Below, piece by piece: positions 2,611 through 64,000 of a stretch of DNA of 64,000 bases. The stretch spans positions 1-64,000 of the IMG/VR virus record IMGVR_UViG_3300005965_000002. One strand, 5' to 3'. The translations under genes and the position numbers were made by a program. The notes beneath the pieces were generated by a model. It saw only the letters and a program-made list of their open reading frames with translations, did not search any database and was not told where the DNA came from. How positions within the stretch are numbered: position 1 is the first letter of the stretch; each line of letters opens with the position of its first letter.

Positions 2611-2924
2611 TTATATCTTACCGTGCTTGTTTTCCCATTCTTCCCGGAACCTTCTAGCGTACTTATTGACCCATTCTTCACAAGCTTCTTCATCTAGGTC
2701 TCTTCCTTCTTGTTCACTTCTGATCCATTTATACTTCTCGATTTCTTCTATTTCATCCTTCATAAACTTGAAATATTTGCTGTCAGGATTAATAGGAGAA
2801 GGAGGGAAGCTGTCGTCCTTACAGCATATACCAGTAGATCCCTTTAAACACGGCATCGATACTCCCCTGTATATTGGTGCCTGAGGGGGGACTTGAACCC
2901 CCACACCTTTCGGCACTAGATCCT

Positions 2925-3716
2925 CTTACTACTCCTAGTTTCCCAGGCCCTCTCGGTTGTAGTCTGGACTATATCTTCACCCTCAGTTTTACCTGTAGGG
3001 GCCTGACGTATAGTCTCTGAGGGGTCACTAAGACTTCCCTGCGGATTGCCGATTATTATCCATACAGATTTTTACTAATAATCTGCTAATAAGTTGGCAG
3101 ACTCATAGTACTGTAGGCTTTACGGGTTTCCCGCATATAGTCAGGTTTCACGCTCCCAATTACTTGAAAGGTGCTCAGGATATGAAGAACATTTCAAAAG
3201 AACTTCTTAAAAAATACTATCTACAGCAAAAACTTACACCCTATAAAATAGGAGAACTCTTTGGAGTTAACCACAAAACTGTAAGGAGCTACTTAAAAAA
3301 ATACCAAATACCCATGCGTACTGCCTCAGAATATAATTTTTTAGCCCGTAAGAGTCATACAAGACCCGACAAAAAAAAGTTACAAAGTAAATTATCCATT
3401 GCCGGGCATTCTGCTTTTCTTTGTGAAGGTTGGCATACAGAAAAAACAAATGCTTTTTATTTCTGTAATACAGATCCCGCCCTCATTCTTTTGGTCCTTA
3501 ATACGCTAAAAAGGATTTATCAAGTTAAAAGAATCGCTATACAAATAATAGCTAAAGAAAAAACAGGAACTAAAAAATTATTTGATATCTTTCCAGAAGC
3601 CTCCTTTATTGTTGAAAAAGATAGAAAAACTCCTATAGTTCGCCTTAGGTGTGGGGGTAAAAATCTTGCTAGAGAAGTAATAGAAAATTCTTACAGAATA
3701 GTTACTTCACTTTACT
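2925..3716 (-). ncRNA. group I intron (792 nt) in anticodon of tRNA-Leu(TAG)
   Basis: Inserted after U34, ends in G; core elements TCAGAGACTA and AAGATATAGTCC present. Confidence 0.9.
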
Positions 3717-4575: not shown

Positions 4576-4797
4576 AGCGGGGGGTGGGATTCGAACCCAC
4601 AGCGATTATCCCTAACCGGATTATTTTTCAGACGCTAGGGTTTCCGTTATTACGGTTCCTCATCATTGTTCGGGCTATAGCTAGCTCTGTTCAGGCCCGA
4701 ACCCAGGTAGAGGCGTGCAACCGGTCTCGCTTAACCCGGTCAGTTTGTTTTCTCCCGAACCTGGATGGGAGGCGTCTACCAATTCCGCCACCCCCGC
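4576..4797 (-). ncRNA. 222-nt tRNA-like RNA with ~140-nt structured insertion
   Basis: Acceptor GCGGGGG/CCCCCGC, Leu-type D arm, canonical T arm; several hairpins between anticodon-like arm and T arm. Confidence 0.75.
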
Positions 4798-11731: not shown

Positions 11732-12406
11732 TAAAGAATGATTGTTTTGCTTTCTCTACAAGTTTCTTCCAAACGGTTGTACTCAGTTTTGGGTACTGTC
11801 TGTGTGCGGTACTGATGATATGAGGCGATACCCATTCCAAGAAGAAGGATGCTGAGGAGAGCAGCACTTATGAATAAGCCATCACCTGACGTGGCTGCTA
11901 AAGCTACTGAAAGAATGACAATAAAAAAGAGGAAAGAGATAACTATTACTAAAAAAATAGGTAGCATACTAGTCCTTTTTTGAGGCGTCGCGCTTATAGA
12001 TATCACATTTAGATATACCACATTTGCTGATGCCCTCTAGTGTTCTTTGTTCCAGGTCAGAATAGTCTTCCCACGGAATAATCGGGGTAAATGATTCTTT
12101 GGCTTTCTTCCCCATCTCAGTACGGCTTTGAATATTTTCTATGTTAGGCTTATCCAATGTTATTCCTTTACTTCTCCTGAAAATATGTGATTGTCGCATT
12201 TAACTACATCATCTTGACAGGTATCTTTTAGTACCGGATGATGCCCTCTAAATTCAGGATTGCTCATGCATTTAGGCCATTTATCAGTATGGTCACACAT
12301 AATGCATAAATTAGGTAATGTAGCTAATTCATTCATAAATACTTCCTGAAAAAATGGTACTCGGGACGAGATTCGAACTCGTACGGGGTTACCCCCAATG
12401 GATTTT

Positions 12407-13174
12407 CTTACTACTCTTGCTTTCACAAGCCGCTATAACGTTGTAGTCTGGACTATATCATCTCCTTAGTAAAACCTTAGGAGGGACGTGCATAGTCTCT
12501 GAACCTTCCCCATTTTAAAGGGGCTCGGCTGCTGATTACCCAATCTCTGATAGTTTTTTAACTTTCACACCCGCTGTTTTCAGCCATGTTGTAGTCATCT
12601 GAGCTATAAGGGCTTTCCAGCAATTCTCGTCCTGCTCACCTATTGATTTCTCAATAAGGGCTCTTTGATCCCTTATAAAAAAGTGAAGCCTGCCATGCTG
12701 CATCCTACTAATAATTATCATGTTACTTAAAGAGTTGTCTTTTATATCACCGTTAATATGATGAATAACTTCGTTATAAGAAAGTTTTCTCTTCAAAACT
12801 TGTTCAGCTATTACCCGGTGTATATCTTTAGAACTTCCTTTAAGTTTATTGTAATTACCAGTAGCATTGTTACCTATTTTTGAGACTTTTCTATAGCATT
12901 CTAAACAGTACTTTTGGTCTTTGTGGTTTAGCTTAATTTTTTTAGTGCATAAAACACAAAATCCCCAACCGTATCTATTTTTGTAAGCCGCTCCTCCTTT
13001 TTGAAGATAAAAATATTTACGTCTTTCTAGGTAACAAGGATTACAGTATCGTCTTCCTTTTGTTGGCGGGATCTTTTTACATTTAACACAAAGCCTCTCC
13101 ATAATAACTCCTTTTATTGGAAGGACCAATATTAGGAGATTATGGTGGACACAACGTGTCAAGTGTAAAAAACA
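12407..13174 (-). ncRNA. group I intron (768 nt) in anticodon of tRNA-Leu(TAA)
   Basis: After U34, ends ...AGTAGTAAG; TCAGAGACTA and GATATAGTCC core elements. Confidence 0.9.
12536..13102 (-). CDS. intron-encoded HNH homing endonuclease with zinc fingers
   Basis: HRVIAE..L.R.L...EVIHHING...DN...N motif; CxxC pairs; start at ATG 13102 with RBS GGAG. Confidence 0.85.
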   Translation of the reverse strand: MERLCVKCKKIPPTKGRRYCNPCYLERRKYFYLQKGGAAYKNRYGWGFCVLCTKKIKLNHKDQKYCLECYRKVSKIGNNATGNYNKLKGSSKDIHRVIAEQVLKRKLSYNEVIHHINGDIKDNSLSNMIIISRMQHGRLHFFIRDQRALIEKSIGEQDENCWKALIAQMTTTWLKTAGVKVKKLSEIG

Positions 13175-16276: not shown

Positions 16277-17830
16277 TTACATTTTGTCCCTCCTTTTTTT
16301 CCATCTTTTCATAAGTTCTTTCTCCATATATTCTTTGGAAGGTTTCTTACCTTCTTTTTCAACGTATTCGTCCTCGATATCATTAACTATTCCAATAGCT
16401 ACTCCAACCTCAGGTCCAGCTTTTATATCGAGCAGTTCTTTTATCTCATTGCCGTTTAGGGGCGGCTTCTTCGATACAGGTACTTTTCTAGCTTGTTCTA
16501 TTTTTTCCCTTAGCATAGGAATTGAGTTACTAGGAGGTATTTTACCTAATTGATCTGCTTCAGCTAAATCGAGTAGAGAATCTACCAATTCGTCCCCAAT
16601 GCTTCTAATGAAACGACGTAATGCCTTTTCTGTAAGCTTTCCTTCTTCTAGATCTTTCGCCAAGGCATGGGGACGCATATGGTTTCTAACCATCTTTTTA
16701 ACCTTGTCGATATCTTTGACCTTAAAGTTCAGCCTCCTCATTATGCCCTCGGCTATTTCAGAGGCGGCAGCTTCATGGCCGTGGTGCTTTATTTCACCCT
16801 CCATCATAGATCTTGTTGCGGGCTTTCCAATGTCGTGCAGCAGAGCTGCCATCTGATTATTAAGACCAGGCTTTGCATTATCAAGCACCATAAGAGTGTG
16901 CGTCAATACATCACCTTCCTGGTGATGCCTCTCTGATTGCGTTTCCTCTTGTAGTGCTTTTACCTCGGGCAGTATGTGCTCAAGAAGACCGGTATCTCTC
17001 ATAAATTTAATCATAGAGGATAGTTTACCGTAATCAGCTATTTTTTCCATTTCCTCTTGGATACGCTCACTCGAAATGATATTAATTCGGTCTGCATTTC
17101 TTTTTACGGAGTCTATCATGTACTGTGGGATCTTCCAGTTGTATTTAGCTTTGAATCTCACAAGTCTGAGCATTCTCAATGGATCGCTCGTAAACATTTC
17201 ATCCAGGTTTACTTTCGGATGACCAGTAAGGTTTCCTTCTTCTATATCCTTCCGGCTACGCCCGGTAAGATCTTTTATCTCACCGGTAGATAAATCTTTT
17301 AAGAGCATGTTGACCGTAAAGTCACGCCTCATTATATCTTCCTCTACGGTGCCCGGCTCGGTTACTCTTTGCCTGGATTTAGGATCGGGAAAGGATTCCT
17401 TCTGGGAGTCAGCAAATTCTATTACTGCGCCCTGAGTCTGGTAGAGGTCACCTTTATAGTTAATGTTTTCCTTAAAGGTAATCTGCCATATCGGGTAAGA
17501 TTTTCCCATTTGATAAGGAGTCGATACAGATCCTGGATTCTCTTTGTTTAACGTAGTATTGATATATTTGGTCAGCTCTTCTGCGCCACCCCCCTTAGGG
17601 CTATCTACCATTATATCCAGGTCTTTGGCTTTTATTGAAGGATCTTTTTTTATTTTACTCAGATACTCATCGCGGACGTAACCGCCGACAGCATAAGCCT
17701 TACCTTTCCAAGGAGTGGTTGGTAGCCAATCTTTAAAAAGTCTTTCTACTTCTTTTTCTGCATCCGCAGCTACCTTTTTTAAAAGGTGGTTAGCTGCTTC
17801 TCTCAGTTTCGCTGCTGTCTTGAGTTCCAT
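16277..17830 (-). CDS. cca: CCA-adding tRNA nucleotidyltransferase with HD domain
   Basis: AVGGYVRD, DLD, RRDFTVN, DPLRMLR, SERI, LLHDIGKP motifs. Confidence 0.92.
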   Translation of the reverse strand: MELKTAAKLREAANHLLKKVAADAEKEVERLFKDWLPTTPWKGKAYAVGGYVRDEYLSKIKKDPSIKAKDLDIMVDSPKGGGAEELTKYINTTLNKENPGSVSTPYQMGKSYPIWQITFKENINYKGDLYQTQGAVIEFADSQKESFPDPKSRQRVTEPGTVEEDIMRRDFTVNMLLKDLSTGEIKDLTGRSRKDIEEGNLTGHPKVNLDEMFTSDPLRMLRLVRFKAKYNWKIPQYMIDSVKRNADRINIISSERIQEEMEKIADYGKLSSMIKFMRDTGLLEHILPEVKALQEETQSERHHQEGDVLTHTLMVLDNAKPGLNNQMAALLHDIGKPATRSMMEGEIKHHGHEAAASEIAEGIMRRLNFKVKDIDKVKKMVRNHMRPHALAKDLEEGKLTEKALRRFIRSIGDELVDSLLDLAEADQLGKIPPSNSIPMLREKIEQARKVPVSKKPPLNGNEIKELLDIKAGPEVGVAIGIVNDIEDEYVEKEGKKPSKEYMEKELMKRWKKRRDKM

Positions 17831-23616: not shown

Positions 23617-23688
23617 AGAAGAAGGCAGGAATCGAACCCACGCCTTCTCCCGGACAGGGAGTGTTCAACCAGCTTAAACTACTTCTTC
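23617..23688 (-). ncRNA. atypical tRNA-Asp(GTC)-like RNA
   Basis: Acceptor GAAGAAG/CTTCTTC, normal T arm, anticodon arm CTCCC-TGTCC-GGGAG (5-nt loop). Confidence 0.6.
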
Positions 23689-23953: not shown

Positions 23954-24031
23954 TGGTAGGGACGCCCGGGATTGAACCGGGGACAACGCGGATTTTCAGT
24001 CCGCTGCTCTACCAAACTGAGCTAAGTGGCC
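23954..24031 (-). tRNA. tRNA-Phe(GAA) with mismatched (chimeric) acceptor stem
   Basis: GCGGA-CTGAAAA-TCCGC; 5' GGCCACT versus 3' CGTCCCT has 3 mismatches. Confidence 0.75.
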
Positions 24032-24081
24032 TTAAATTTATTTTAAAGCCACTAAAGTCAGAATCTCCCATCATTGCCTCC

Positions 24082-30807: not shown

Positions 30808-30968
30808 TTTAATACTCTACTTTATCCGTCTCAAAGGATATACCAGTTTTTTTGACGATAACAGTTACCTGTATATGCTTTAAAGGGATTGGTAAAGGCG
30901 GTAAATAAATGTCTTTTCTATACGGATCATATCTTTTAATCGAAGGAACGAATGGTAACAGTTTTAAG

Positions 30969-31041
30969 CGCCCCCGAAAGGATTCGAACCTTTGACTGAC
31001 TGGTTTTAGGGACCACTCCTCTACCACTGAGGTACGGGGGC
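30969..31041 (-). tRNA. putative amber-suppressor tRNA (anticodon CTA), Trp-like anticodon arm
   Basis: TGGT-CCCTAAA-ACCA; perfect acceptor GCCCCCG/CGGGGGC; G73; C33. Confidence 0.7.
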
Positions 31042-55568: not shown

Positions 55569-56269
55569 TAGTATCCTAATTCAGATGCTGCTTGAACAAT
55601 TGGATCTGGCATCTTGATCTGCGTATAGGATGTCTTATTTTTATATACCTGGAGTTTCTCTATTTTCTCCCCCACAAAATCAGAGATTCTTTTTAATTCG
55701 TGATCCTGGTTTTCTATAAAATCTTCCATTTTTACCACTATCGATCTTTCTGGGTAAGGAACAGATTTTATAATGTCGTATTGAAGCTTCCAGCTCCATA
55801 AGCTTATATTTGCGTTTTTTAATCCACCAAACGCTCCAAAATGATTTAACAGCTTATCGCTATAGTGAGGGGCATTTCTCATTGGATTGCGAAACCAGAG
55901 TACATAGTAAAACTCAGGATATAGCCTAGTAAGCCAGGGATAGATAAAAGTTGTTTCTGGAAGCTTCCACCCTTTTTTTGGAGATTTATCGAGTAGAATG
56001 TCATGCAGATACCGGCGAATATCCTCGGCATCTTTAGCAGTGCAGCCTTCTATTGCTGGTTGTAGATTATAGTGATTGCCATCAAATTTAATTTGACTGA
56101 TAAACCTTTTGGCAATATCATACATTAAAGCATAGGGTTCCTTATCATAGCTTACATTCCTAAACTGAGGGGAACCCATAAAAAATCCGCTACTAGAAAA
56201 AGTTTTTGCTATTAATCTAGAAGCAGAAGATCCACGACCAATGATTGTTACAATCTTAGGACTCATCAC
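55568..56269 (-). CDS. sulfotransferase-family protein
   Basis: IIGRGSSASR, GWKLPET, FRNP, VKMEDF. Confidence 0.7.
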   Translation of the reverse strand: MMSPKIVTIIGRGSSASRLIAKTFSSSGFFMGSPQFRNVSYDKEPYALMYDIAKRFISQIKFDGNHYNLQPAIEGCTAKDAEDIRRYLHDILLDKSPKKGWKLPETTFIYPWLTRLYPEFYYVLWFRNPMRNAPHYSDKLLNHFGAFGGLKNANISLWSWKLQYDIIKSVPYPERSIVVKMEDFIENQDHELKRISDFVGEKIEKLQVYKNKTSYTQIKMPDPIVQAASELGY

Positions 56270-56489
56270 CTTCCTCTACTTCGTTACAGGCTATGCTTGC
56301 GTTTGCCCACATGATCGCTTCGCGTAGCTTTTCTATCGCTTTGTTAGTTTCCTCGCCTTCGGGGCAAAGCTTGACAATCTTTTTCGCTAGTCTTTTTCCT
56401 GCAGTCCTGAGAGTTTCATAACGATCGGGTTGGTCTCCACCCGGTCTGTGGTAGCTAAAAATGTTTTCGATTTGGTCTTTTGTAATCAT
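56256..56489 (-). CDS. Acb2/Tad1-like small helical protein
   Basis: FSYH.P..Q..RY..LR...CP...AIEKLREAIMWANASIA; start at ATG 56489. Confidence 0.65.
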   Translation of the reverse strand: MITKDQIENIFSYHRPGGDQPDRYETLRTAGKRLAKKIVKLCPEGEETNKAIEKLREAIMWANASIACNEVEEGDES

Positions 56490-56509
56490 CTTATCTTCTC
56501 CATAAAAAT

Positions 56510-56584
56510 TGGAGCAGGAGACGAGACTCGAACTCGCAACAATCACCTTGGAAGGGTGGGGCTCTACCATTGAGCTACTCCTGC
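56510..56584 (-). tRNA. tRNA-Gly(TCC)
   Basis: Loop CTTCCAA; U73; CCA. Confidence 0.92.
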
Positions 56585-57955: not shown

Positions 57956-58145
57956 TAAAAATTCTCAAAATTTTCTGCAAAGTGTATTCTTTCATTTTGA
58001 CGGCATTCTCCCAATCTTAAAGAGACTGATTTGCCAAATTCTTTTCTTTTCTTTTAATATAATAGCACTTGTCTGTGTCAGGGCAATATATGCACATTAC
58101 ATCTGTAGTACTCATTATAACCTCTTTGAGCTACTTGATAAATAG

Positions 58146-58270
58146 AGCCCCGGGTTGGATTCGAACCAACGATGGAGGTCTTCAGTCACCCAGCAAACAG
58201 CCTCTCAACTGGTCGCGAGTTCAATTTAACCACTGGGTATTGTCGCCGTGTGCCTTCTCGGCTCCAGGGC
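58146..58270 (-). ncRNA. 125-nt tRNA-like RNA (acceptor and T arm, long helix replacing anticodon arm)
   Basis: GCCCTGG/CCGGGGC-U; GTTGG-TTCGAAT-CCAAC; ACCCAGT/GCTGGGT helix. Confidence 0.65.
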
Positions 58271-58569
58271 ATTCTGTGTCTATTTTAACATACTTTTTAG
58301 TATCTTAGTTTTAAAACGTATCTTTTCTTTTACTAAGTTTTTTCAAGCACTTCTTTGCTGTTTTTTCGAGCTCTGTAATAACAAGAACACAATCGTTGAC
58401 TTCGCCCTCGTAATAAAAATGAACAAACCCACCCTCTTTGTCATCACTTAGTTTAGAGGCTATAAGTTTCATTTTATGGTCTAAATAGGTGTTTTCCATG
58501 TTTCTCCTTTCTCTTACCATAAAAATATAGTAAAAGATAAGGAGATAATTAATGAGGATTGTGTTAGAA

Positions 58570-58644
58570 TGGAGCAGGGGACGGGAGTCGAACCCGCAAC
58601 AACCACCTTGGCAAGGTGGAGCTCTACCGTTGAGCTACCCCTGC
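58570..58644 (-). tRNA. tRNA-Gly(GCC)
   Basis: CCACC-TTGCCAA-GGTGG; CCA. Confidence 0.93.
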
Positions 58645-58645
58645 T

Positions 58646-59104
58646 TTATCTGAGATTATAGAAGTAAAGTAGACCAGCCCACCCCGAGGGTAAACACCTA
58701 GGTGCTTCTTCTAACTCTTCTCCATATTTTACCGCCATTTCAAGGAAGTACTTAGCATGGAAAAAGGCCTCTACCATAGGTCTCGTGTGTTTAAGCCAAT
58801 TTTTGTTATGCTTGTCTTGGAAGGTTTTGCCTGAAGCACCTTCCTTAAGTATCTCTTCTAAAAAACAGTTAGGCTTTACTCCCTCAGGTGCTAAGCTGTT
58901 AAGCTTTTCAATAATCTCTTTGGTAATCCCTTGGATGTAATAAACCTTAAAAGATTGGTGGTAGAACCGGTATATATGGTCTTCATAAAACCAATGACCG
59001 TTTATCTTCTCTAACAGTTCTTTAAGCTCCTTGTGATTACGCTTTATATTTTCTAAAAGCGCGTTAGCTTGCTTATGCATGTTCTCAAAATAATTATGAT
59101 CCAT
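58646..59104 (-). CDS. conserved hypothetical protein
   Basis: YRFYHQSFKVY...EAFFHAKYFL...LPSGWA. Confidence 0.7.
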   Translation of the reverse strand: MDHNYFENMHKQANALLENIKRNHKELKELLEKINGHWFYEDHIYRFYHQSFKVYYIQGITKEIIEKLNSLAPEGVKPNCFLEEILKEGASGKTFQDKHNKNWLKHTRPMVEAFFHAKYFLEMAVKYGEELEEAPRCLPSGWAGLLYFYNLR

Positions 59105-59162
59105 AAAAACCCTCCTTCTTTAATATAACTATTTACAGAAAGGTTTTTTGAAAATAATAAAA

Positions 59163-59234
59163 TAGCCCGTACCGGAGTCGAACCGATGCGTCCTGGCTGA
59201 GAACCAGGTATCCTGACCACTAGATGAACGGGCC
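59163..59234 (-). tRNA. tRNA-Glu(CTC)
   Basis: CCTGG-TTCTCAG-CCAGG; no CCA. Confidence 0.9.
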
Positions 59235-59239
59235 ATTAA

Positions 59240-59313
59240 TAGAGGTAGGGGGATTCGAACCCCCGATCTACGCCGTGAAAGGGCGTTGAGTTTGACCACT
59301 ACTCTATACCTCC
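59240..59313 (-). tRNA. tRNA-Glu(TTC)
   Basis: ACGCC-CTTTCAC-GGCGT; no CCA. Confidence 0.9.
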
Positions 59314-59318
59314 ATATA

Positions 59319-59400
59319 TGGAGCTGGGAGAGGGTGTTTCACCCACACAGAGCTCATTCCCCTGAGCAAGGGGTCCGCTGCCTATTTCTGGAGTCCCAGC
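59319..59400 (-). ncRNA. 82-nt tRNA-like RNA ending UCCA
   Basis: GCTGGGA/TCCCAGC-TCCA; non-canonical T loop TGAAACA; CCCCT-TGCTC-AGGGG arm. Confidence 0.65.
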
Positions 59401-59592
59401 ATAGTAACTAATCTAAGGTGCGTTCTTATGCTTATTCCTGTCAAAGAGCTTCGGCTTCCACTGAGTGCAGTGATCTGCGCACCTAACGTAGATAGCCTGT
59501 TTTTTGGCCGTGCACACACGATAGCCCTGTCTTATGGATCTACACCCATTAGCACAGTTGTAACAGCTTTCGTCATGTATTTTAGTGGCCAT

Positions 59593-59784
59593 AAAAAAAA
59601 CCCTGTCAGTTTTAGTCCTGACAGGGTTTTATTCGACTTATGCAATAGATACCCCATCAGGACATTATAGTACCCTCGCCTTCTCCTTCTCTTCCTTCTA
59701 TCCTGATGGTAGTCGTAGCAATCATAATTTTTCCTTAAATTGGTTCGTTATCTTTAATATACCAATTAACGACCGAAAATTCAA
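59593..59784 (-). promoter_or_regulatory. attenuator 5: promoter TTGAAT-N17-TATATT, leader ORF 59725-59657, terminator 59630-59593 (boxA-like at 59450-59439)
   Basis: Leader MIATTTIRIEGREGEGEGTIMS; GTCCTGATGGGGT pairs over 13 bp with ACCCTGTCAGGAC. Confidence 0.9.
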
Positions 59785-61975: not shown

Positions 61976-64000
61976 TTAACCTTGCCATTTTTGAACTATA
62001 GGTATCCTTCGACCGATACCGAAAGCTTTTTCGTGTATCTTTAAGGTTATAGGTGCCTGATTTCTTTTAAATTCGTTTCTTCTAACCATACGACCAATCT
62101 GGTGGTAGTCGCTTGCACTCATTTGATTTTGTACCCGCAGTATCTCTGCCCAGTCTTCCCTATATGCTTCTCTTCCTTCAATAAATACCTTTAGTCTCGC
62201 ATCTAGAAGAGGATAAGGGGGCAAATTATCAGTATCCTCCTGTCCGGGAGCTAGCTCAGCGGAAGGAGCCTTATTAATGATAGACTCCGGTATTAATTCT
62301 TTATTATGAAATTCATTATAGTACCTGGCAAGCTCATAGACTTCCATCTTATAAAGATCACTTAAAGGGGCCAGGCCCCCATTCATGTCCCCGTATATTG
62401 TGCAATTATGCGTTTTTACGCCATTTACTGTGTATTCATGGTCTTTTTCTACTGTGAAATCGAACATTTCAACTTCTGTTTCCACAGTTTCTAATTTTTT
62501 AATAGCGGCGTAGTATGTCTTACTCTTAATTCTATCTTCCAAAGCAACCGTGATATCACTTTTATTTTTAATTGTATCAAGAAATTTTTTAAGAATACTT
62601 CTTCCAATCCACTTACTATTTTTATTTAAGTGCCTTCGAATAGTCCCATTTACCTTCCAATGTGTGTTGTCCTTGATGTGTGATAATTCACAGTGTGTTA
62701 TAGGAACAACATCATAGCTGGTTTTTATTTTTTTTGTGTTTTTTGTGTTATTATATAGTCTATTAGCTATACTTTTCTTCAGGATTTTAAAATTTAACAA
62801 TTTTTCTGATTCTATTGCCGGTATATACACTTCGTGTAAGTTTTTCCTGGACCTAATATAGGAAACTACCCCCAAATTCAACAAAATTAGATGTAACTTT
62901 TCTACTAATTTATAGCTAACACTATGGTATAGGATTTCTGACGTATTTTTGTTACCGTTGCTAGTACTATCTAAAAAAACACCTTCAATGAAAGGTTTTA
63001 CAAGATTTAGCGGGGCTCTCATAATGCACGCCGGTACATCTTTATTATGGGAACCATGTTCAATTCCTAAATGTCTTAAAAAACTGTTAAACTGAACACT
63101 ACATATTTCTATAAAAAAGCAACCTCTTTGGTCTTTTTTTGTAACTTTATACGAGCTTTCTTTTAGCCTTATGCTCTTAAAAAACATTACACAGAAATCA
63201 GAAACATACTTTTTAGAAGTACGTATTCTATAGATACTATCATTTATCCCGGAATAAGAGCCGTCAGCAACACAGATACCTATAAATTTAGATAGATTTT
63301 CATTCAAGTGAGATGGAAAATTAATATCTTGGGATATATAGTCAAATTCTTTTTTTTTGTAAGAAAACGTTATGTCGGTACTTCTGCCCCATATGTTTTC
63401 ACCAAAACTTACTATAGACATGTCTCCTACTTTTAGATTTTTAGCCTCTATAAATTCTTCTTTTCCATTTTTGTGTATCTTTATTTTGTGGTCTTCCGAT
63501 ATCTTTATTATATCCCCAAGTATGTTAGTAATTTTGATAAATCTATTTTTAACATTCCTAAATGAGTGCGTAACAGGCATGTCCTTGATAGAATAGGAAT
63601 TTTTTTCGTCAAAAACGCTACGAGCGCTAATTATGCCATTATCCGTAAATATGTAACTATCTCCATGGACACAATAACCCACGGACATCTCACTTTTGTT
63701 TCCTGTGGAAACTAGTAGATACCCAAATTGGTTAGAAAAAGCCATCAAAAGGAGCCCTCTTATACGGGCTTGCATGTTTTGCCTAGTCAAATCTGCGTCT
63801 GGAAGGTCGCCGACAGCGAAAAGAAAATCAGTGAAAACTTTTTCAAATATCCCTTTGATAGGTAGATTCTTTAGCTCTACTCCCAAGTTACTGCATAGCT
63901 TCTCAGAGTCCGTCACACTTCCTATACTAGAATACTCTGATGGCATTGTTACCGCAAAAACTTTGTCCGGACCAATAGCATCAGCGGCCATAGCTATTGC
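61976..64000 (-). CDS. nadE: NAD+ synthetase (5' end outside window) containing an intein
   Basis: MPS.YS, NMQARIRG, TGNKSE..VGY|CTIYGD, DLYK, KAPSAEL..GQ.D, EFKR.QAP. Confidence 0.92.
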   Translation of the reverse strand, partial: AIAMAADAIGPDKVFAVTMPSEYSSIGSVTDSEKLCSNLGVELKNLPIKGIFEKVFTDFLFAVGDLPDADLTRQNMQARIRGLLLMAFSNQFGYLLVSTGNKSEMSVGYCVHGDSYIFTDNGIISARSVFDEKNSYSIKDMPVTHSFRNVKNRFIKITNILGDIIKISEDHKIKIHKNGKEEFIEAKNLKVGDMSIVSFGENIWGRSTDITFSYKKKEFDYISQDINFPSHLNENLSKFIGICVADGSYSGINDSIYRIRTSKKYVSDFCVMFFKSIRLKESSYKVTKKDQRGCFFIEICSVQFNSFLRHLGIEHGSHNKDVPACIMRAPLNLVKPFIEGVFLDSTSNGNKNTSEILYHSVSYKLVEKLHLILLNLGVVSYIRSRKNLHEVYIPAIESEKLLNFKILKKSIANRLYNNTKNTKKIKTSYDVVPITHCELSHIKDNTHWKVNGTIRRHLNKNSKWIGRSILKKFLDTIKNKSDITVALEDRIKSKTYYAAIKKLETVETEVEMFDFTVEKDHEYTVNGVKTHNCTIYGDMNGGLAPLSDLYKMEVYELARYYNEFHNKELIPESIINKAPSAELAPGQEDTDNLPPYPLLDARLKVFIEGREAYREDWAEILRVQNQMSASDYHQIGRMVRRNEFKRNQAPITLKIHEKAFGIGRRIPIVQKWQG
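62405..63673 (-). mobile_element. 423-aa intein with LAGLIDADG endonuclease in NadE
   Basis: Starts CVHGDS, ends FDFTV..DHEY.VNG..THN followed by Cys; IGICVADG and FIEGVFLDS blocks. Confidence 0.93.

What the first reader, a model, noticed from the sequence alone, without database searches (positions are those of the whole stretch)
58146..59400. Two more U73 tRNA mimics in block 5
58146-58270 keeps the acceptor and T arms but has a long irregular helix instead of an anticodon arm. 59319-59400 ends in UCCA, has a TGAAACA T-loop, and its loop GCTCA can pair with TGAGC in the variable region. That is the same anticodon-occluding idea as the 4576 RNA. Four mimics (4576, 23617, 58146, 59319) share discriminator U, hinting at a common partner or non-ribosomal use.
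Basis: partly seen in the sequence, partly recalled or inferred. Interest (0 to 1): 0.6.

Follow-up and report, generated by a model that had tools for sequence, protein, structure and literature searches.

The report
Two degenerate tRNA-like genes in phage array
Two small genes in the tRNA cluster of a huge hypersaline-lake phage keep the ends of a tRNA but have a broken decoding part; they are most likely decaying tRNA copies, and nothing found here shows they are specialised "mimics" with a shared partner.

Summary
Both elements exist, on the minus strand of a 37-tRNA array in a 258.6-kb phage contig (38.6% GC).

Candidate 1 (58270→58146, 125 nt):
- It has a 7-bp acceptor stem, a type-II-like D arm and a textbook T arm (GUUGG-UUCGAAU-CCAAC).
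- About 73 nt that fold no better than shuffled sequence replace the anticodon and variable arms.

Candidate 2 (59400→59319, 82 nt):
- It has a perfect 7-bp acceptor stem plus U-CCA and lies 5 nt upstream of tRNA-Glu.
- It aligns end to end with type-II tRNAs (loop UUGCUCA versus UUGCUAA in the array's tRNA-Ser).
- It lacks a proper D arm and the U55-C56 T-loop motif.

Both lack U8, fill GC-rich islands, and are missed by ARAGORN and Rfam.

No homologue was found outside this phage lineage. The one diverged copy of candidate 1 shows no extra constraint. U73 occurs in 8 of 36 ordinary tRNAs of the array. The GCUCA/UGAGC pairing is possible but disfavoured (about 4%).

Best reading: tRNA-derived genes in decay that are probably still processed into small RNAs. 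T4 RNAC has the same architecture as candidate 1. A dedicated function is not excluded, and expression is untested.

The parts
58146..58270 (-). Candidate 1: 125-nt tRNA-like gene. RNA position p = 58271 minus the window coordinate.
   Evidence: Sequence read. It coincides with a GC island at 58140-58280. It is 100% identical in at least 5 other assemblies and has 2 substitutions in relative L103.
58264..58270 (-). Candidate 1, acceptor 5' strand GCCCUGG. It pairs with 58147-58153 (CCGGGGC). The discriminator U is at 58146, and no CCA is encoded.
58245..58262 (-). Candidate 1, D arm GCCG-AGAAGGCACA-CGGC (type-II-like 'GCCGAG', with a GG in the loop). Position 8 is A, not U.
58171..58244 (-). 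Candidate 1, central 74 nt that replace the anticodon arm and variable region. It contains an 8-bp outer helix (RNA 32-39 with 77-84) and a Phe-like loop CUGAAGA (RNA 86-92) with a 3-of-5-bp stem.
   Evidence: It folds no better than shuffles. The deletion test gives no unique tRNA. It has no similarity to any array tRNA.
58154..58170 (-). Candidate 1, canonical T arm GUUGG-UUCGAAU-CCAAC.
59319..59400 (-). Candidate 2: 82-nt tRNA-like gene ending in U-CCA, 5 nt upstream of tRNA-Glu(UUC). RNA position p = 59401 minus the window coordinate.
   Evidence: The GC island 59163-59409 covers it. ARAGORN calls it Ser(gct) only at an 80% threshold. It aligns end to end with type-II tRNAs.
59359..59373 (-). 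Candidate 2, anticodon-arm-like hairpin CCCCU-UGCUC-AGGGG. It can also be read as a 4-bp stem with the 7-nt loop UUGCUCA (GCU anticodon, C at position 37).
   Evidence: Pair probabilities are about 0.9. The loop differs from the array's tRNA-Ser(GCU) loop UUGCUAA only at position 37.
59352..59356 (-). Candidate 2, UGAGC, complementary to loop GCUCA (59363-59367). This is an alternative helix, mutually exclusive with the hairpin.
   Evidence: Energies are -25.1 against -25.6 kcal/mol; ensemble probability is about 0.04.
59330..59346 (-). Candidate 2, T-arm-like hairpin. As a tRNA arm it reads GUGGG-UGAAACA-CCCUC (one U.U mismatch, no U55-C56). The fold prefers GGGUG-AAA-CACCC.
59162..59314 (-). 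Context: tRNA-Glu(UUC) and tRNA-Glu(CUC), directly downstream of candidate 2.
58646..59104 (-). Context: ORF152, a conserved protein of unknown function lying between the two candidates.
59597..59630 (-). Context: terminator-like hairpin (13 pairs plus a U run) about 200 nt upstream of candidate 2.

Best explanation
Both loci are derivatives of tRNA genes inside a fast-evolving phage tRNA array. They have lost the ability to decode but keep the 'top half' of a tRNA.

- Candidate 1 is a tRNA gene with a type-II-like D arm whose anticodon and variable region is replaced or interrupted by about 50-70 nt of unstructured sequence.
- Candidate 2 is a degenerate Ser(GCU)-type copy. Its D arm is collapsed, its variable arm is truncated, its T loop has lost U55-C56, and position 37 is C.

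Inferred, not shown: both are transcribed together with the neighbouring tRNAs and ORFs. Both keep an intact acceptor stem stacked on a T-type hairpin, so RNase P and 3'-end processing probably release them as discrete small RNAs. Candidate 1 could then receive CCA from the CCA-adding enzyme the phage encodes. They are not expected to be used by the ribosome. They need no common partner. They are products of the gene birth-and-death turnover visible elsewhere in this array.
For: - Position, strand and spacing match the array's tRNAs.
- Partial tRNA anatomy with lesions in the core and the decoding part. Both lack U8, which 34 of 36 array tRNAs have. Candidate 2 lacks the UUC..A T-loop motif that 32 of 36 have. 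Candidate 1 has no anticodon stem at the canonical place.
- The array shows a graded series of decay. Thirty-three tRNAs score 53-71 bits and three score 31-43 bits. tRNA-Phe has only 4 of 7 acceptor pairs. Then come the 4577-4797 insert-bearing element and these two candidates.
- Intact-looking Ser(GCU) and Leu(GAG) genes exist in the array, so for those readings the candidates are redundant. For the Phe(GAA) reading the array's only other copy is itself defective in its acceptor stem, so redundancy is weaker there.
- The central regions fold no better than shuffles.
- No homologue was found outside the lineage.
- The diverged copy L103 shows no reduced substitution rate in candidate 1: 1.6% against a 0.7% background.
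- Candidate 2 aligns end to end with type-II tRNAs.
- A CCA-adding-enzyme-like ORF lies in the array.
Against: - The lesions are 'clean'. All 7 acceptor pairs are intact in both, and candidate 1 also keeps 5 of 5 T-stem and 3-4 D-stem pairs and a perfect T loop. A long-dead gene would be expected to carry scattered stem mismatches.
- Both remain sharply bounded GC islands.
- Both are 100% identical in assemblies from several samples. This may only mean that one population was sampled several times.
- T4 RNAC shows that a non-decoding tRNA-like RNA can be a maintained, expressed phage gene.
- Conserved insert-bearing tRNA-like genes exist in other contigs.
- Neither a parent gene nor the origin of the insert could be identified.
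Confidence: 0.55

Rival explanations
1. They are maintained, functional tRNA-like stable RNAs of the kind represented by phage T4 RNAC (species 1 RNA). Host tRNA enzymes process them, and they are used off the ribosome. Possible uses are as decoys or sponges for tRNA-targeting defence nucleases, or for tRNA-binding enzymes.
For: - Candidate 1 has the same ground plan as T4 rnaC: a 7-bp terminal stem stacked on a canonical T arm, long non-tRNA sequence in between, location inside the tRNA cluster, and the same strand.
- Stems are intact and GC-island boundaries are sharp.
- Candidate 2, and the array's second tRNA-Asp, can close the anticodon loop to 5 nt through a 32-38 pair and carry C37. Published work shows that phage tRNAs escape anticodon nucleases through anticodon-loop changes (PMC10264068, PMC11464382, PMC11555353).
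Against: - There is no sequence or structure homology to rnaC: the candidate 1 model does not hit it.
- rnaC folds far better than shuffles (z = -4.6) and the candidates do not.
- No conservation beyond one lineage, no covariation and no expression data.
- The two candidates do not resemble each other.
Confidence: 0.25
2. Candidate 1 is a functional tRNA gene interrupted by a short intervening sequence that is removed after transcription. The product would be Leu(GAG) if a 30-nt insert at position 32/33 is removed, or Phe(GAA) if about 53 nt are removed.
For: - ARAGORN accepts several excision products at its default threshold.
- The array already holds two tRNAs with group I introns and a 147-nt-insert element.
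- Other phage arrays hold tRNAs with hairpin inserts in the anticodon region, and one pair is conserved with compensatory changes.
- The array's own tRNA-Phe has a defective acceptor stem.
Against: - There is no unique excision. Four different anticodons result, and each has an imperfect anticodon stem of 3-4 of 5 pairs.
- The insert is far too short for a group I intron (established knowledge), and Rfam finds none there.
- The 258 kb contain no splicing endonuclease and no RtcB.
- The array's tRNA-Tyr is 85 nt, the long-variable-arm form characteristic of bacteria (type inferred from its length), so a bacterial host is inferred, and protein-spliced tRNA introns are not known in bacteria.
- Positions 8 and 14 are A and G, not the canonical U8-A14.
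Confidence: 0.1
3. One or both are chance look-alikes in spacer DNA and are not RNA genes at all.
For: - Loose 'acceptor plus hairpin' criteria give about 180 chance hits in this genome.
- About 14 elements with 7 perfect pairs plus NCCA are expected by chance.
- Candidate 2 has no canonical T loop or D arm.
Against: - Candidate 1 carries the exact tRNA T-arm motif plus a D arm, and is one of only three such places outside the called tRNAs.
- Candidate 2 is GC-rich (60% against 38.6%), intergenic, on the array strand, starts with G1, ends in NCCA 5 nt before the next tRNA, and aligns along its whole length with type-II tRNAs.
Confidence: 0.05

Closest known systems
Phage T4 RNAC (species 1 RNA, rnaC; NC_000866 70908-71046), and its neighbour RNAD
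   Same: - A small non-decoding RNA gene packed into a phage tRNA cluster on the tRNA strand.
- rnaC has a 7-bp terminal acceptor-like stem stacked directly on a canonical T arm (CCGGG-UUCGAAU-CCCGG), with long non-tRNA sequence where the D and anticodon arms would be.
- Its function is still unknown (PMC3014915, PMC9697503).
   Different: - No detectable homology: the candidate 1 model does not hit it.
- rnaC has no D arm, and its inserts form very stable hairpins (z = -4.6). Candidate 1 keeps a D arm and has an unstructured insert (z about -0.1 to -1).
- rnaC is experimentally shown to be expressed. These candidates are not.
- Candidate 2 does not share this plan.
Degenerate or pseudo-tRNA genes in phage and bacterial tRNA arrays
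   Same: In-array position, partial cloverleaf, loss of conserved core nucleotides (U8; U55-C56 in candidate 2), sub-threshold scores with tRNA finders, redundancy with better-preserved isoacceptors, and restriction to one lineage.
   Different: Acceptor stems are unusually well preserved, and in candidate 1 so are the D and T arms. The defect in candidate 1 is a single large replacement or insertion, not scattered point mutations.
Intron-containing tRNA genes (bacterial group I introns in tRNA-Leu; archaeal bulge-helix-bulge introns)
   Same: Extra sequence in the anticodon region of an otherwise recognisable tRNA gene. Genuine group I intron-split tRNAs occur in the same array.
   Different: The insert of 30-54 nt is too short for a group I ribozyme, and Rfam gives no hit. 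No clean exon junction restores a canonical anticodon stem. No splicing endonuclease or RtcB ligase was found, and the inferred host is bacterial.
Phage tRNAs with altered anticodon loops that escape tRNA-targeting defences (T5 and others; PMC10264068, PMC11464382, PMC11555353)
   Same: Phage-encoded tRNA-array members with unusual anticodon loops. Candidate 2 has C37 and a possible 32-38 pair.
   Different: The published cases are fully functional, decodable tRNAs with point changes. These candidates lack core tRNA features and probably cannot decode.

Membership tests
Canonical tRNA (Rfam RF00005 / ARAGORN) | Score above the family threshold (Rfam gathering score 29 bits; ARAGORN default) | tested here: not met
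   Neither locus is reported by ARAGORN at default settings, even with introns allowed. Neither is reported by Rfam at E<=10 in a 2-kb search or at E<=0.05 in the whole window. ARAGORN calls them only at 70-80% of its threshold.
Canonical tRNA (Rfam RF00005 / ARAGORN) | 7-bp acceptor stem with a discriminator base | tested here: met
   Candidate 1 has 7 of 7 pairs (one G.U). Candidate 2 has 7 of 7 Watson-Crick pairs plus U-CCA.
Canonical tRNA (Rfam RF00005 / ARAGORN) | U8 and a T loop with U54-U55-C56...A58 | tested here: not met
   Position 8 is A in candidate 1 and C in candidate 2, against U in 34 of 36 array tRNAs. Candidate 1 has the T loop UUCGAAU (met). Candidate 2 has UGAAACA (not met).
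Canonical tRNA (Rfam RF00005 / ARAGORN) | 5-bp anticodon stem with a 7-nt loop at the canonical distance from the D and T arms | tested here: not met
   Candidate 1 has no such stem. The best readings have 3-4 of 5 pairs and require removal of 30-54 nt. Candidate 2 has 4 bp plus a 7-nt loop with C37, or 5 bp plus a 5-nt loop.
T4 RNAC-type tRNA-like stable RNA | Sequence or structure homology to T4 rnaC | tested here: not met
   Covariance model R1 of candidate 1 does not hit rnaC in L105; only T4 tRNA-Leu scores 18.5 bits. Rfam has no rnaC family against which to test.
T4 RNAC-type tRNA-like stable RNA | Architecture: a terminal 7-bp stem stacked on a canonical T arm, a non-tRNA interior, and location in a phage tRNA cluster | tested here: met
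   Met for candidate 1. Not met for candidate 2, which has a non-canonical T loop.
T4 RNAC-type tRNA-like stable RNA | Accumulates as a discrete stable RNA during infection | not testable with these tools
   No RNA run holds the sequence. The reads laid on the region were DNA contigs only.
tmRNA | tRNA-like domain plus a tag reading frame, detected by ARAGORN or the Rfam tmRNA models | tested here: not met
   ARAGORN in tmRNA mode finds nothing even at a 70% threshold. No Rfam tmRNA hit.
Y RNA-like / YrlA and other curated tRNA-like RNAs in Rfam | A match to any curated Rfam family | tested here: not met
   No family other than chance-level hits overlaps either locus at E<=10.
tRNA interrupted by a group I intron | A group I ribozyme core inside the tRNA gene | tested here: not met
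   Rfam Intron_gpI hits 2944-3239 and 12433-12677 but nothing at 58146-58270. The insert of at most 54-73 nt is far below the size of known group I introns (established knowledge).
tRNA with a protein-spliced (bulge-helix-bulge) intron | Splicing endonuclease and ligase available, and a defined exon junction restoring the anticodon arm | tested here: not met
   No PF01974 or PF01139 in the 258 kb; the record is only about 55% complete, so absence is not proven. The 85-nt tRNA-Tyr, read as the long-variable-arm bacterial type, points to a bacterial host. No unique junction exists.

The most novel reading that the evidence does not exclude
The array encodes a set of deliberately non-decodable tRNA-like RNAs: candidates 1 and 2, the 4577-4797 element, and perhaps the 5-nt-loop tRNA-Asp copy. 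They would keep the acceptor/T 'top half' so that host enzymes process and stabilise them. They would then act as decoys that soak up tRNA-targeting defence nucleases or other tRNA-binding factors. That would be a functional counterpart of the still unexplained T4 RNAC, possibly working together with the conserved ORF152 protein that recurs next to such elements.
Probability: 0.1. Interest if true: 0.7.

Novelty: new member of a known kind. Interest (0 to 1): 0.3.

Why it matters
If these are decaying tRNA copies, they mainly document how quickly huge-phage tRNA arrays gain, break and lose genes. They also show that standard tRNA finders miss part of that record. If instead they are maintained, they would join T4 RNAC as non-decoding tRNA-like phage RNAs. 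The function of that class has been unknown for about 50 years and could be connected to the recently discovered conflict between phage tRNAs and tRNA-cleaving defence systems. The present data do not favour the second reading, but they do not exclude it.

Tried and rejected
HOMOLOGUE SEARCHES
- IMG/VR pattern scans for candidate 1 (two patterns) gave 0 hits. The scan for candidate 2 gave 5 hits, all chance matches with no matching acceptor strand.
- Anchoring on ORF152 homologues in IMG/VR and in metagenomes gave about 85 loci. They are not syntenic and hold no homologue by BLAST or by covariance models R1 and R2.
- The GTDB genome pattern scan returned 34 loci, all ordinary tRNAs or neighbouring tRNA pairs.
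- Whole-record searches of five viral records found nothing. Four metagenome records were not held and so were not searched.
- The patatin anchor found one distant phage with no tRNAs nearby.

THE CLOSE RELATIVE
- The syntenic relative contig (JGI 3300040801) could not be served as DNA and is not in the metagenome collection.
- Attempts to reach a diverged copy of candidate 2 failed: no homologue of ORF59 and no diverged cluster members.
- The laid-reads table was truncated before candidate 2's differences, and the tool is capped at one call (2,801 letters were laid, within the operators' limit).
- I first inferred that an IS607-like element disrupts candidate 2 in the relative. Coordinate arithmetic on the gene table puts it about 100 nt upstream, inside 'ORF59', so I withdrew that inference.

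OTHER TESTS
- The excision test for a hidden intron in candidate 1 was non-discriminating: 69 different deletions gave 4 different anticodons.
- The search for a parent tRNA inside the array matched only the T-loop block.
- ORF152 fold searches (Foldseek PDB, VIA-align wide, ESM Atlas) and profile searches (Pfam, PHROGs, NCBIfam, PDB sequences) gave no assignment. The only signal was weak HEPN-like four-helix similarity at Z about 6.4, below what is meaningful for helical bundles.
Full report
CONTEXT

The window is the first 64 kb of a 258,580-bp IMG/VR virus record. CheckV estimates it at about 55% complete. It was assembled from hypersaline-lake metagenomes, and near-identical DNA is present in several samples. 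ARAGORN finds 37 tRNA genes, all on the minus strand and all within the first 60 kb. Rfam confirms 36 tRNAs and two group I introns. The genome is 38.6% GC. The array's tRNA-Tyr is 85 nt. I read that as the long-variable-arm form typical of bacteria, so I infer a bacterial host.

OBSERVATION: CANDIDATE 1 (minus strand, 58270→58146, 125 nt)

- The acceptor stem is GCCCUGG/CCGGGGC (7 pairs, one G.U). The discriminator is U and no CCA is encoded.
- The D arm reads (G)CCG-AGAAGGCACA-CGG(C), with the 'GCCGAG' typical of type-II tRNAs and a GG in the loop.
- The T arm is the textbook GUUGG-UUCGAAU-CCAAC.
- Between the D and T arms lie 74 nt where 22-40 nt are expected.
- Requiring a 7-bp acceptor stem directly next to a 5-bp stem with a canonical T-loop sequence leaves only three places in the 258 kb outside the called tRNAs. 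These are the 3' exon of an intron-split tRNA, the 4577-4797 element, and candidate 1. The element is therefore not a chance look-alike.
- It exactly fills a GC island at 58140-58280.
- The 'long irregular helix' is weak. The central 74 nt fold no better than shuffled sequence (z = -0.10), the 53-nt hairpin gives z = -1.19, and the whole RNA gives z = -0.95.
- Position 8 is A, whereas 34 of 36 array tRNAs have U8.

OBSERVATION: CANDIDATE 2 (minus strand, 59400→59319, 82 nt)

- The acceptor stem GCUGGGA/UCCCAGC is 7 perfect pairs, followed by U-CCA. The gene ends 5 nt before tRNA-Glu(UUC).
- Elements with 7 perfect pairs plus NCCA occur 28 times in the genome, against about 14 in shuffles. Eleven are called tRNAs. 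Candidate 2 is the only other one that is GC-rich and intergenic; the other three in the array region are AU-rich stretches that look like coding sequence.
- The interior has a CCCCU/AGGGG hairpin. The 7-nt reading of its loop is UUGCUCA.
- The T-like hairpin prefers GGGUG-AAA-CACCC. As a tRNA arm it would read GUGGG-UGAAACA-CCCUC, with a U.U mismatch and no U55-C56.
- The D arm is at best 3 pairs, and position 8 is C.
It is an alternative to the hairpin, not an addition to it, and has about 4% probability in the ensemble.

WHAT THEY ARE NOT

- Neither element is reported by ARAGORN at default settings, with or without introns, or in tmRNA mode.
- No Rfam family is reported for either locus at E<=10.
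- Candidate 1 is not a group I intron carrier. Rfam finds the two real introns elsewhere in the array but nothing here, and the insert is far too short.
- An excision test (3,892 deletion variants) gave 69 ARAGORN-acceptable tRNAs with four different anticodons (Phe, Ser, Gly, Leu). No unique intron can be read off. The two most tRNA-like readings are Leu(GAG) with a 30-nt insert at position 32/33 (4 of 5 stem pairs, long variable arm) and Phe(GAA) after removing positions 27-80 (3 of 5 stem pairs, 3-nt variable loop).
- The genome holds no splicing endonuclease and no RtcB ligase. It does hold a CCA-adding-enzyme-like ORF inside the array.

RELATIVES AND CONSTRAINT

- Both elements are 100% identical in at least five other assemblies of the same phage.
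- One diverged relative (L103, a Logan contig) carries candidate 1 with two C→U changes, at position 21 in the D loop and at position 54. The surrounding 1.85 kb differs by about 0.7% and candidate 1 by 1.6%, so there is no sign of extra constraint. Strong divergence starts only at 58300.
- No diverged copy of candidate 2 could be obtained. A relative's contig aligns up to RNA position 62 and then ends.
- Covariance models of both candidates found only themselves. They were searched against about 0.5 Mb of related phage and MAG loci, phage T4, five whole viral records and 34 bacterial loci. All other hits are ordinary tRNAs matching the shared tRNA core.
- Neither candidate has a recognisable parent among the array's own tRNAs.
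- Candidate 2 aligns end to end with type-II tRNAs. Its loop UUGCUCA differs from the array's tRNA-Ser(GCU) loop UUGCUAA only at position 37.

THE 'SHARED U73' ARGUMENT

Among the 36 Rfam-scored tRNAs the discriminator is A in 17, G in 9, U in 8 and C in 2. CCA is encoded in 16. U73 is therefore common: Thr, Gly, Cys, one Gln, and the second Asp copy. Most genes are followed by U-rich trailers in this AT-rich genome. One of the four 'mimics' (23617) is a tRNA-Asp by both programs. Four elements sharing U, chosen after the fact, is weak evidence for a common partner.

THE ARRAY IS IN FLUX

- Thirty-three tRNAs score 53-71 bits. Three score 31-43 bits: the second Asp copy, Phe and Ser(UGA).
- tRNA-Phe has normal D, anticodon and T arms but only 4 of 7 acceptor pairs.
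- Two Leu-type tRNAs carry group I introns.
- The 4577-4797 element has a Leu-like 5' part, an insert of about 147 nt with no Rfam match, and a canonical T arm.

The two candidates sit at the far end of this series.

CLOSEST KNOWN

Phage T4 encodes two small stable RNAs, RNAC and RNAD, in its tRNA cluster. They are transcribed, classed as late RNAs, and still of unknown function (PMC3014915; PMC9697503). Folding rnaC shows a 7-bp terminal stem (two U.U mismatches) stacked on a canonical T arm, with long hairpins in between. That is the ground plan of candidate 1. It is an analogue and not a demonstrated relative:
- the candidate 1 model does not hit rnaC;
- Rfam has no rnaC family;
- rnaC is very stably folded (z = -4.6), unlike candidate 1.

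MECHANISM (mostly inferred)

Shown:
- the anatomy of both elements;
- their position in the array;
- the lack of detectable homologues;
- the lack of a canonical decoding arm.

Inferred:
- co-transcription with the neighbouring tRNAs and ORFs;
- release by RNase P and 3'-end processing, because the acceptor/T minihelix that those enzymes recognise is intact;
- CCA addition to candidate 1;
- no use in translation.

I rate 'decaying tRNA derivatives with no dedicated function' at about 0.55. I rate 'maintained RNAC-like tRNA-like RNAs' at about 0.25, 'candidate 1 is a spliced functional tRNA' at about 0.1, and chance at about 0.05.

VERDICT

The 'mimic with a common partner' interpretation is not supported by any test that could be run. 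The elements are real, tRNA-derived and lineage-restricted, with a 50-year-old architectural precedent in T4. Interest is modest unless expression and conservation are shown.

Noticed in passing
window 2879-3239 (-) and 12365-12677 (-): Two type-II (Leu-like) tRNA genes are interrupted by Rfam group I introns (79 and 67 bits). Their 3' exons begin with AGGAUC... and AAAAUCC..., followed by a variable arm, a T arm and an acceptor strand. ARAGORN does not call either tRNA.
   Followed up: partly
window 4577-4797 (-): A tRNA-Leu-like 5' part (acceptor plus the GCGGAAUUGGUAGACGC D arm), then an insert of about 147 nt with no Rfam family, then a canonical T arm and acceptor strand with U73.
   Followed up: partly
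window 23954-24033 (-) and 23617-23688 (-): tRNA-Phe(GAA) has normal D, anticodon and T arms but only 4 of 7 acceptor pairs. The second tRNA-Asp copy scores 43 bits and, like candidate 2, has C37 and a possible 32-38 pair that would shrink the anticodon loop to 5 nt.
   Followed up: partly
window 30968-31041 (-): A tRNA with a CUA anticodon, i.e. amber-suppressor type (ARAGORN labels it 'Pyl'). ORFs near the finding are open under the standard bacterial code, so no recoding was assumed.
   Followed up: no
window 58646-59104 (-), ORF152: A 152-aa protein of a large family (1,821 hits) that is about 60% identical across phages and bacterial and archaeal MAGs. It has invariant D42, R46, H49, S51, N100, T107, R108, E112 and H116, with H99 and H106 nearly invariant, which looks like an enzyme active site. 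It matches no Pfam, PHROG or NCBIfam family. The AlphaFold model is confident (pLDDT 93), all-helical, with only weak HEPN-like similarity (Z about 6.4). In 15 of 76 loci a tRNA lies within 500 nt of the homologue.
   Followed up: partly
L097:9294-9396 and L061:9731-9829; L024:983-1082: Other contigs that carry ORF152 homologues hold over-long tRNA-like genes. L097 and L061 share one whose anticodon stem continues into a 9-bp helix with a loop of variable length, with three compensatory pairs between the two copies. L024 has a tRNA(CAU) with a hairpin of about 27 nt in the anticodon loop, directly after tRNA-Glu, about 110 nt downstream of the end of an ORF152 homologue. These look like maintained insert-bearing tRNAs.
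   Followed up: partly
relative contig JGI 3300040801 (gene table only), corresponding to about window 59500: A syntenic relative carries a 2.2-kb insertion encoding a resolvase and a TnpB (Cas12f1-like_TNB), i.e. IS607-type. By coordinate arithmetic it lies about 100 nt upstream of candidate 2, inside the doubtful 'ORF59'. The window's own genome has no TnpB.
   Followed up: partly
window 17228-17698 (-), within a 518-aa frame: A CCA-adding-enzyme-like ORF (PolyA_pol head domain, 51.6 bits) is encoded inside the tRNA array. About half of the array's tRNAs (20 of 36) do not encode CCA.
   Followed up: no
window 56256-56570 (-) and 61976-63991 (-): An Acb2/Tad1-hairpin-like ORF (a candidate anti-defence sponge) lies within the array. 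The NAD synthase gene carries an intein with a LAGLIDADG domain.
   Followed up: no
window 58051-58055 and the small ORF downstream of candidate 1 (about 58020-58115, minus strand): Relative L103 lacks 5 nt here. That turns a 32-codon Cys-rich ORF into a 51-aa ORF with a PDDEXK_5 Pfam hit on record. A sigma-70-like promoter (10 of 12 matches) lies immediately after candidate 1's 3' end (58141-58114, minus strand).
   Followed up: no
L003:7204-7293 (also in L026-L028): A 90-92-nt type-II tRNA with a long variable arm but a CUU (Lys) anticodon, in another phage's tRNA array. This is an unusual combination.
   Followed up: no
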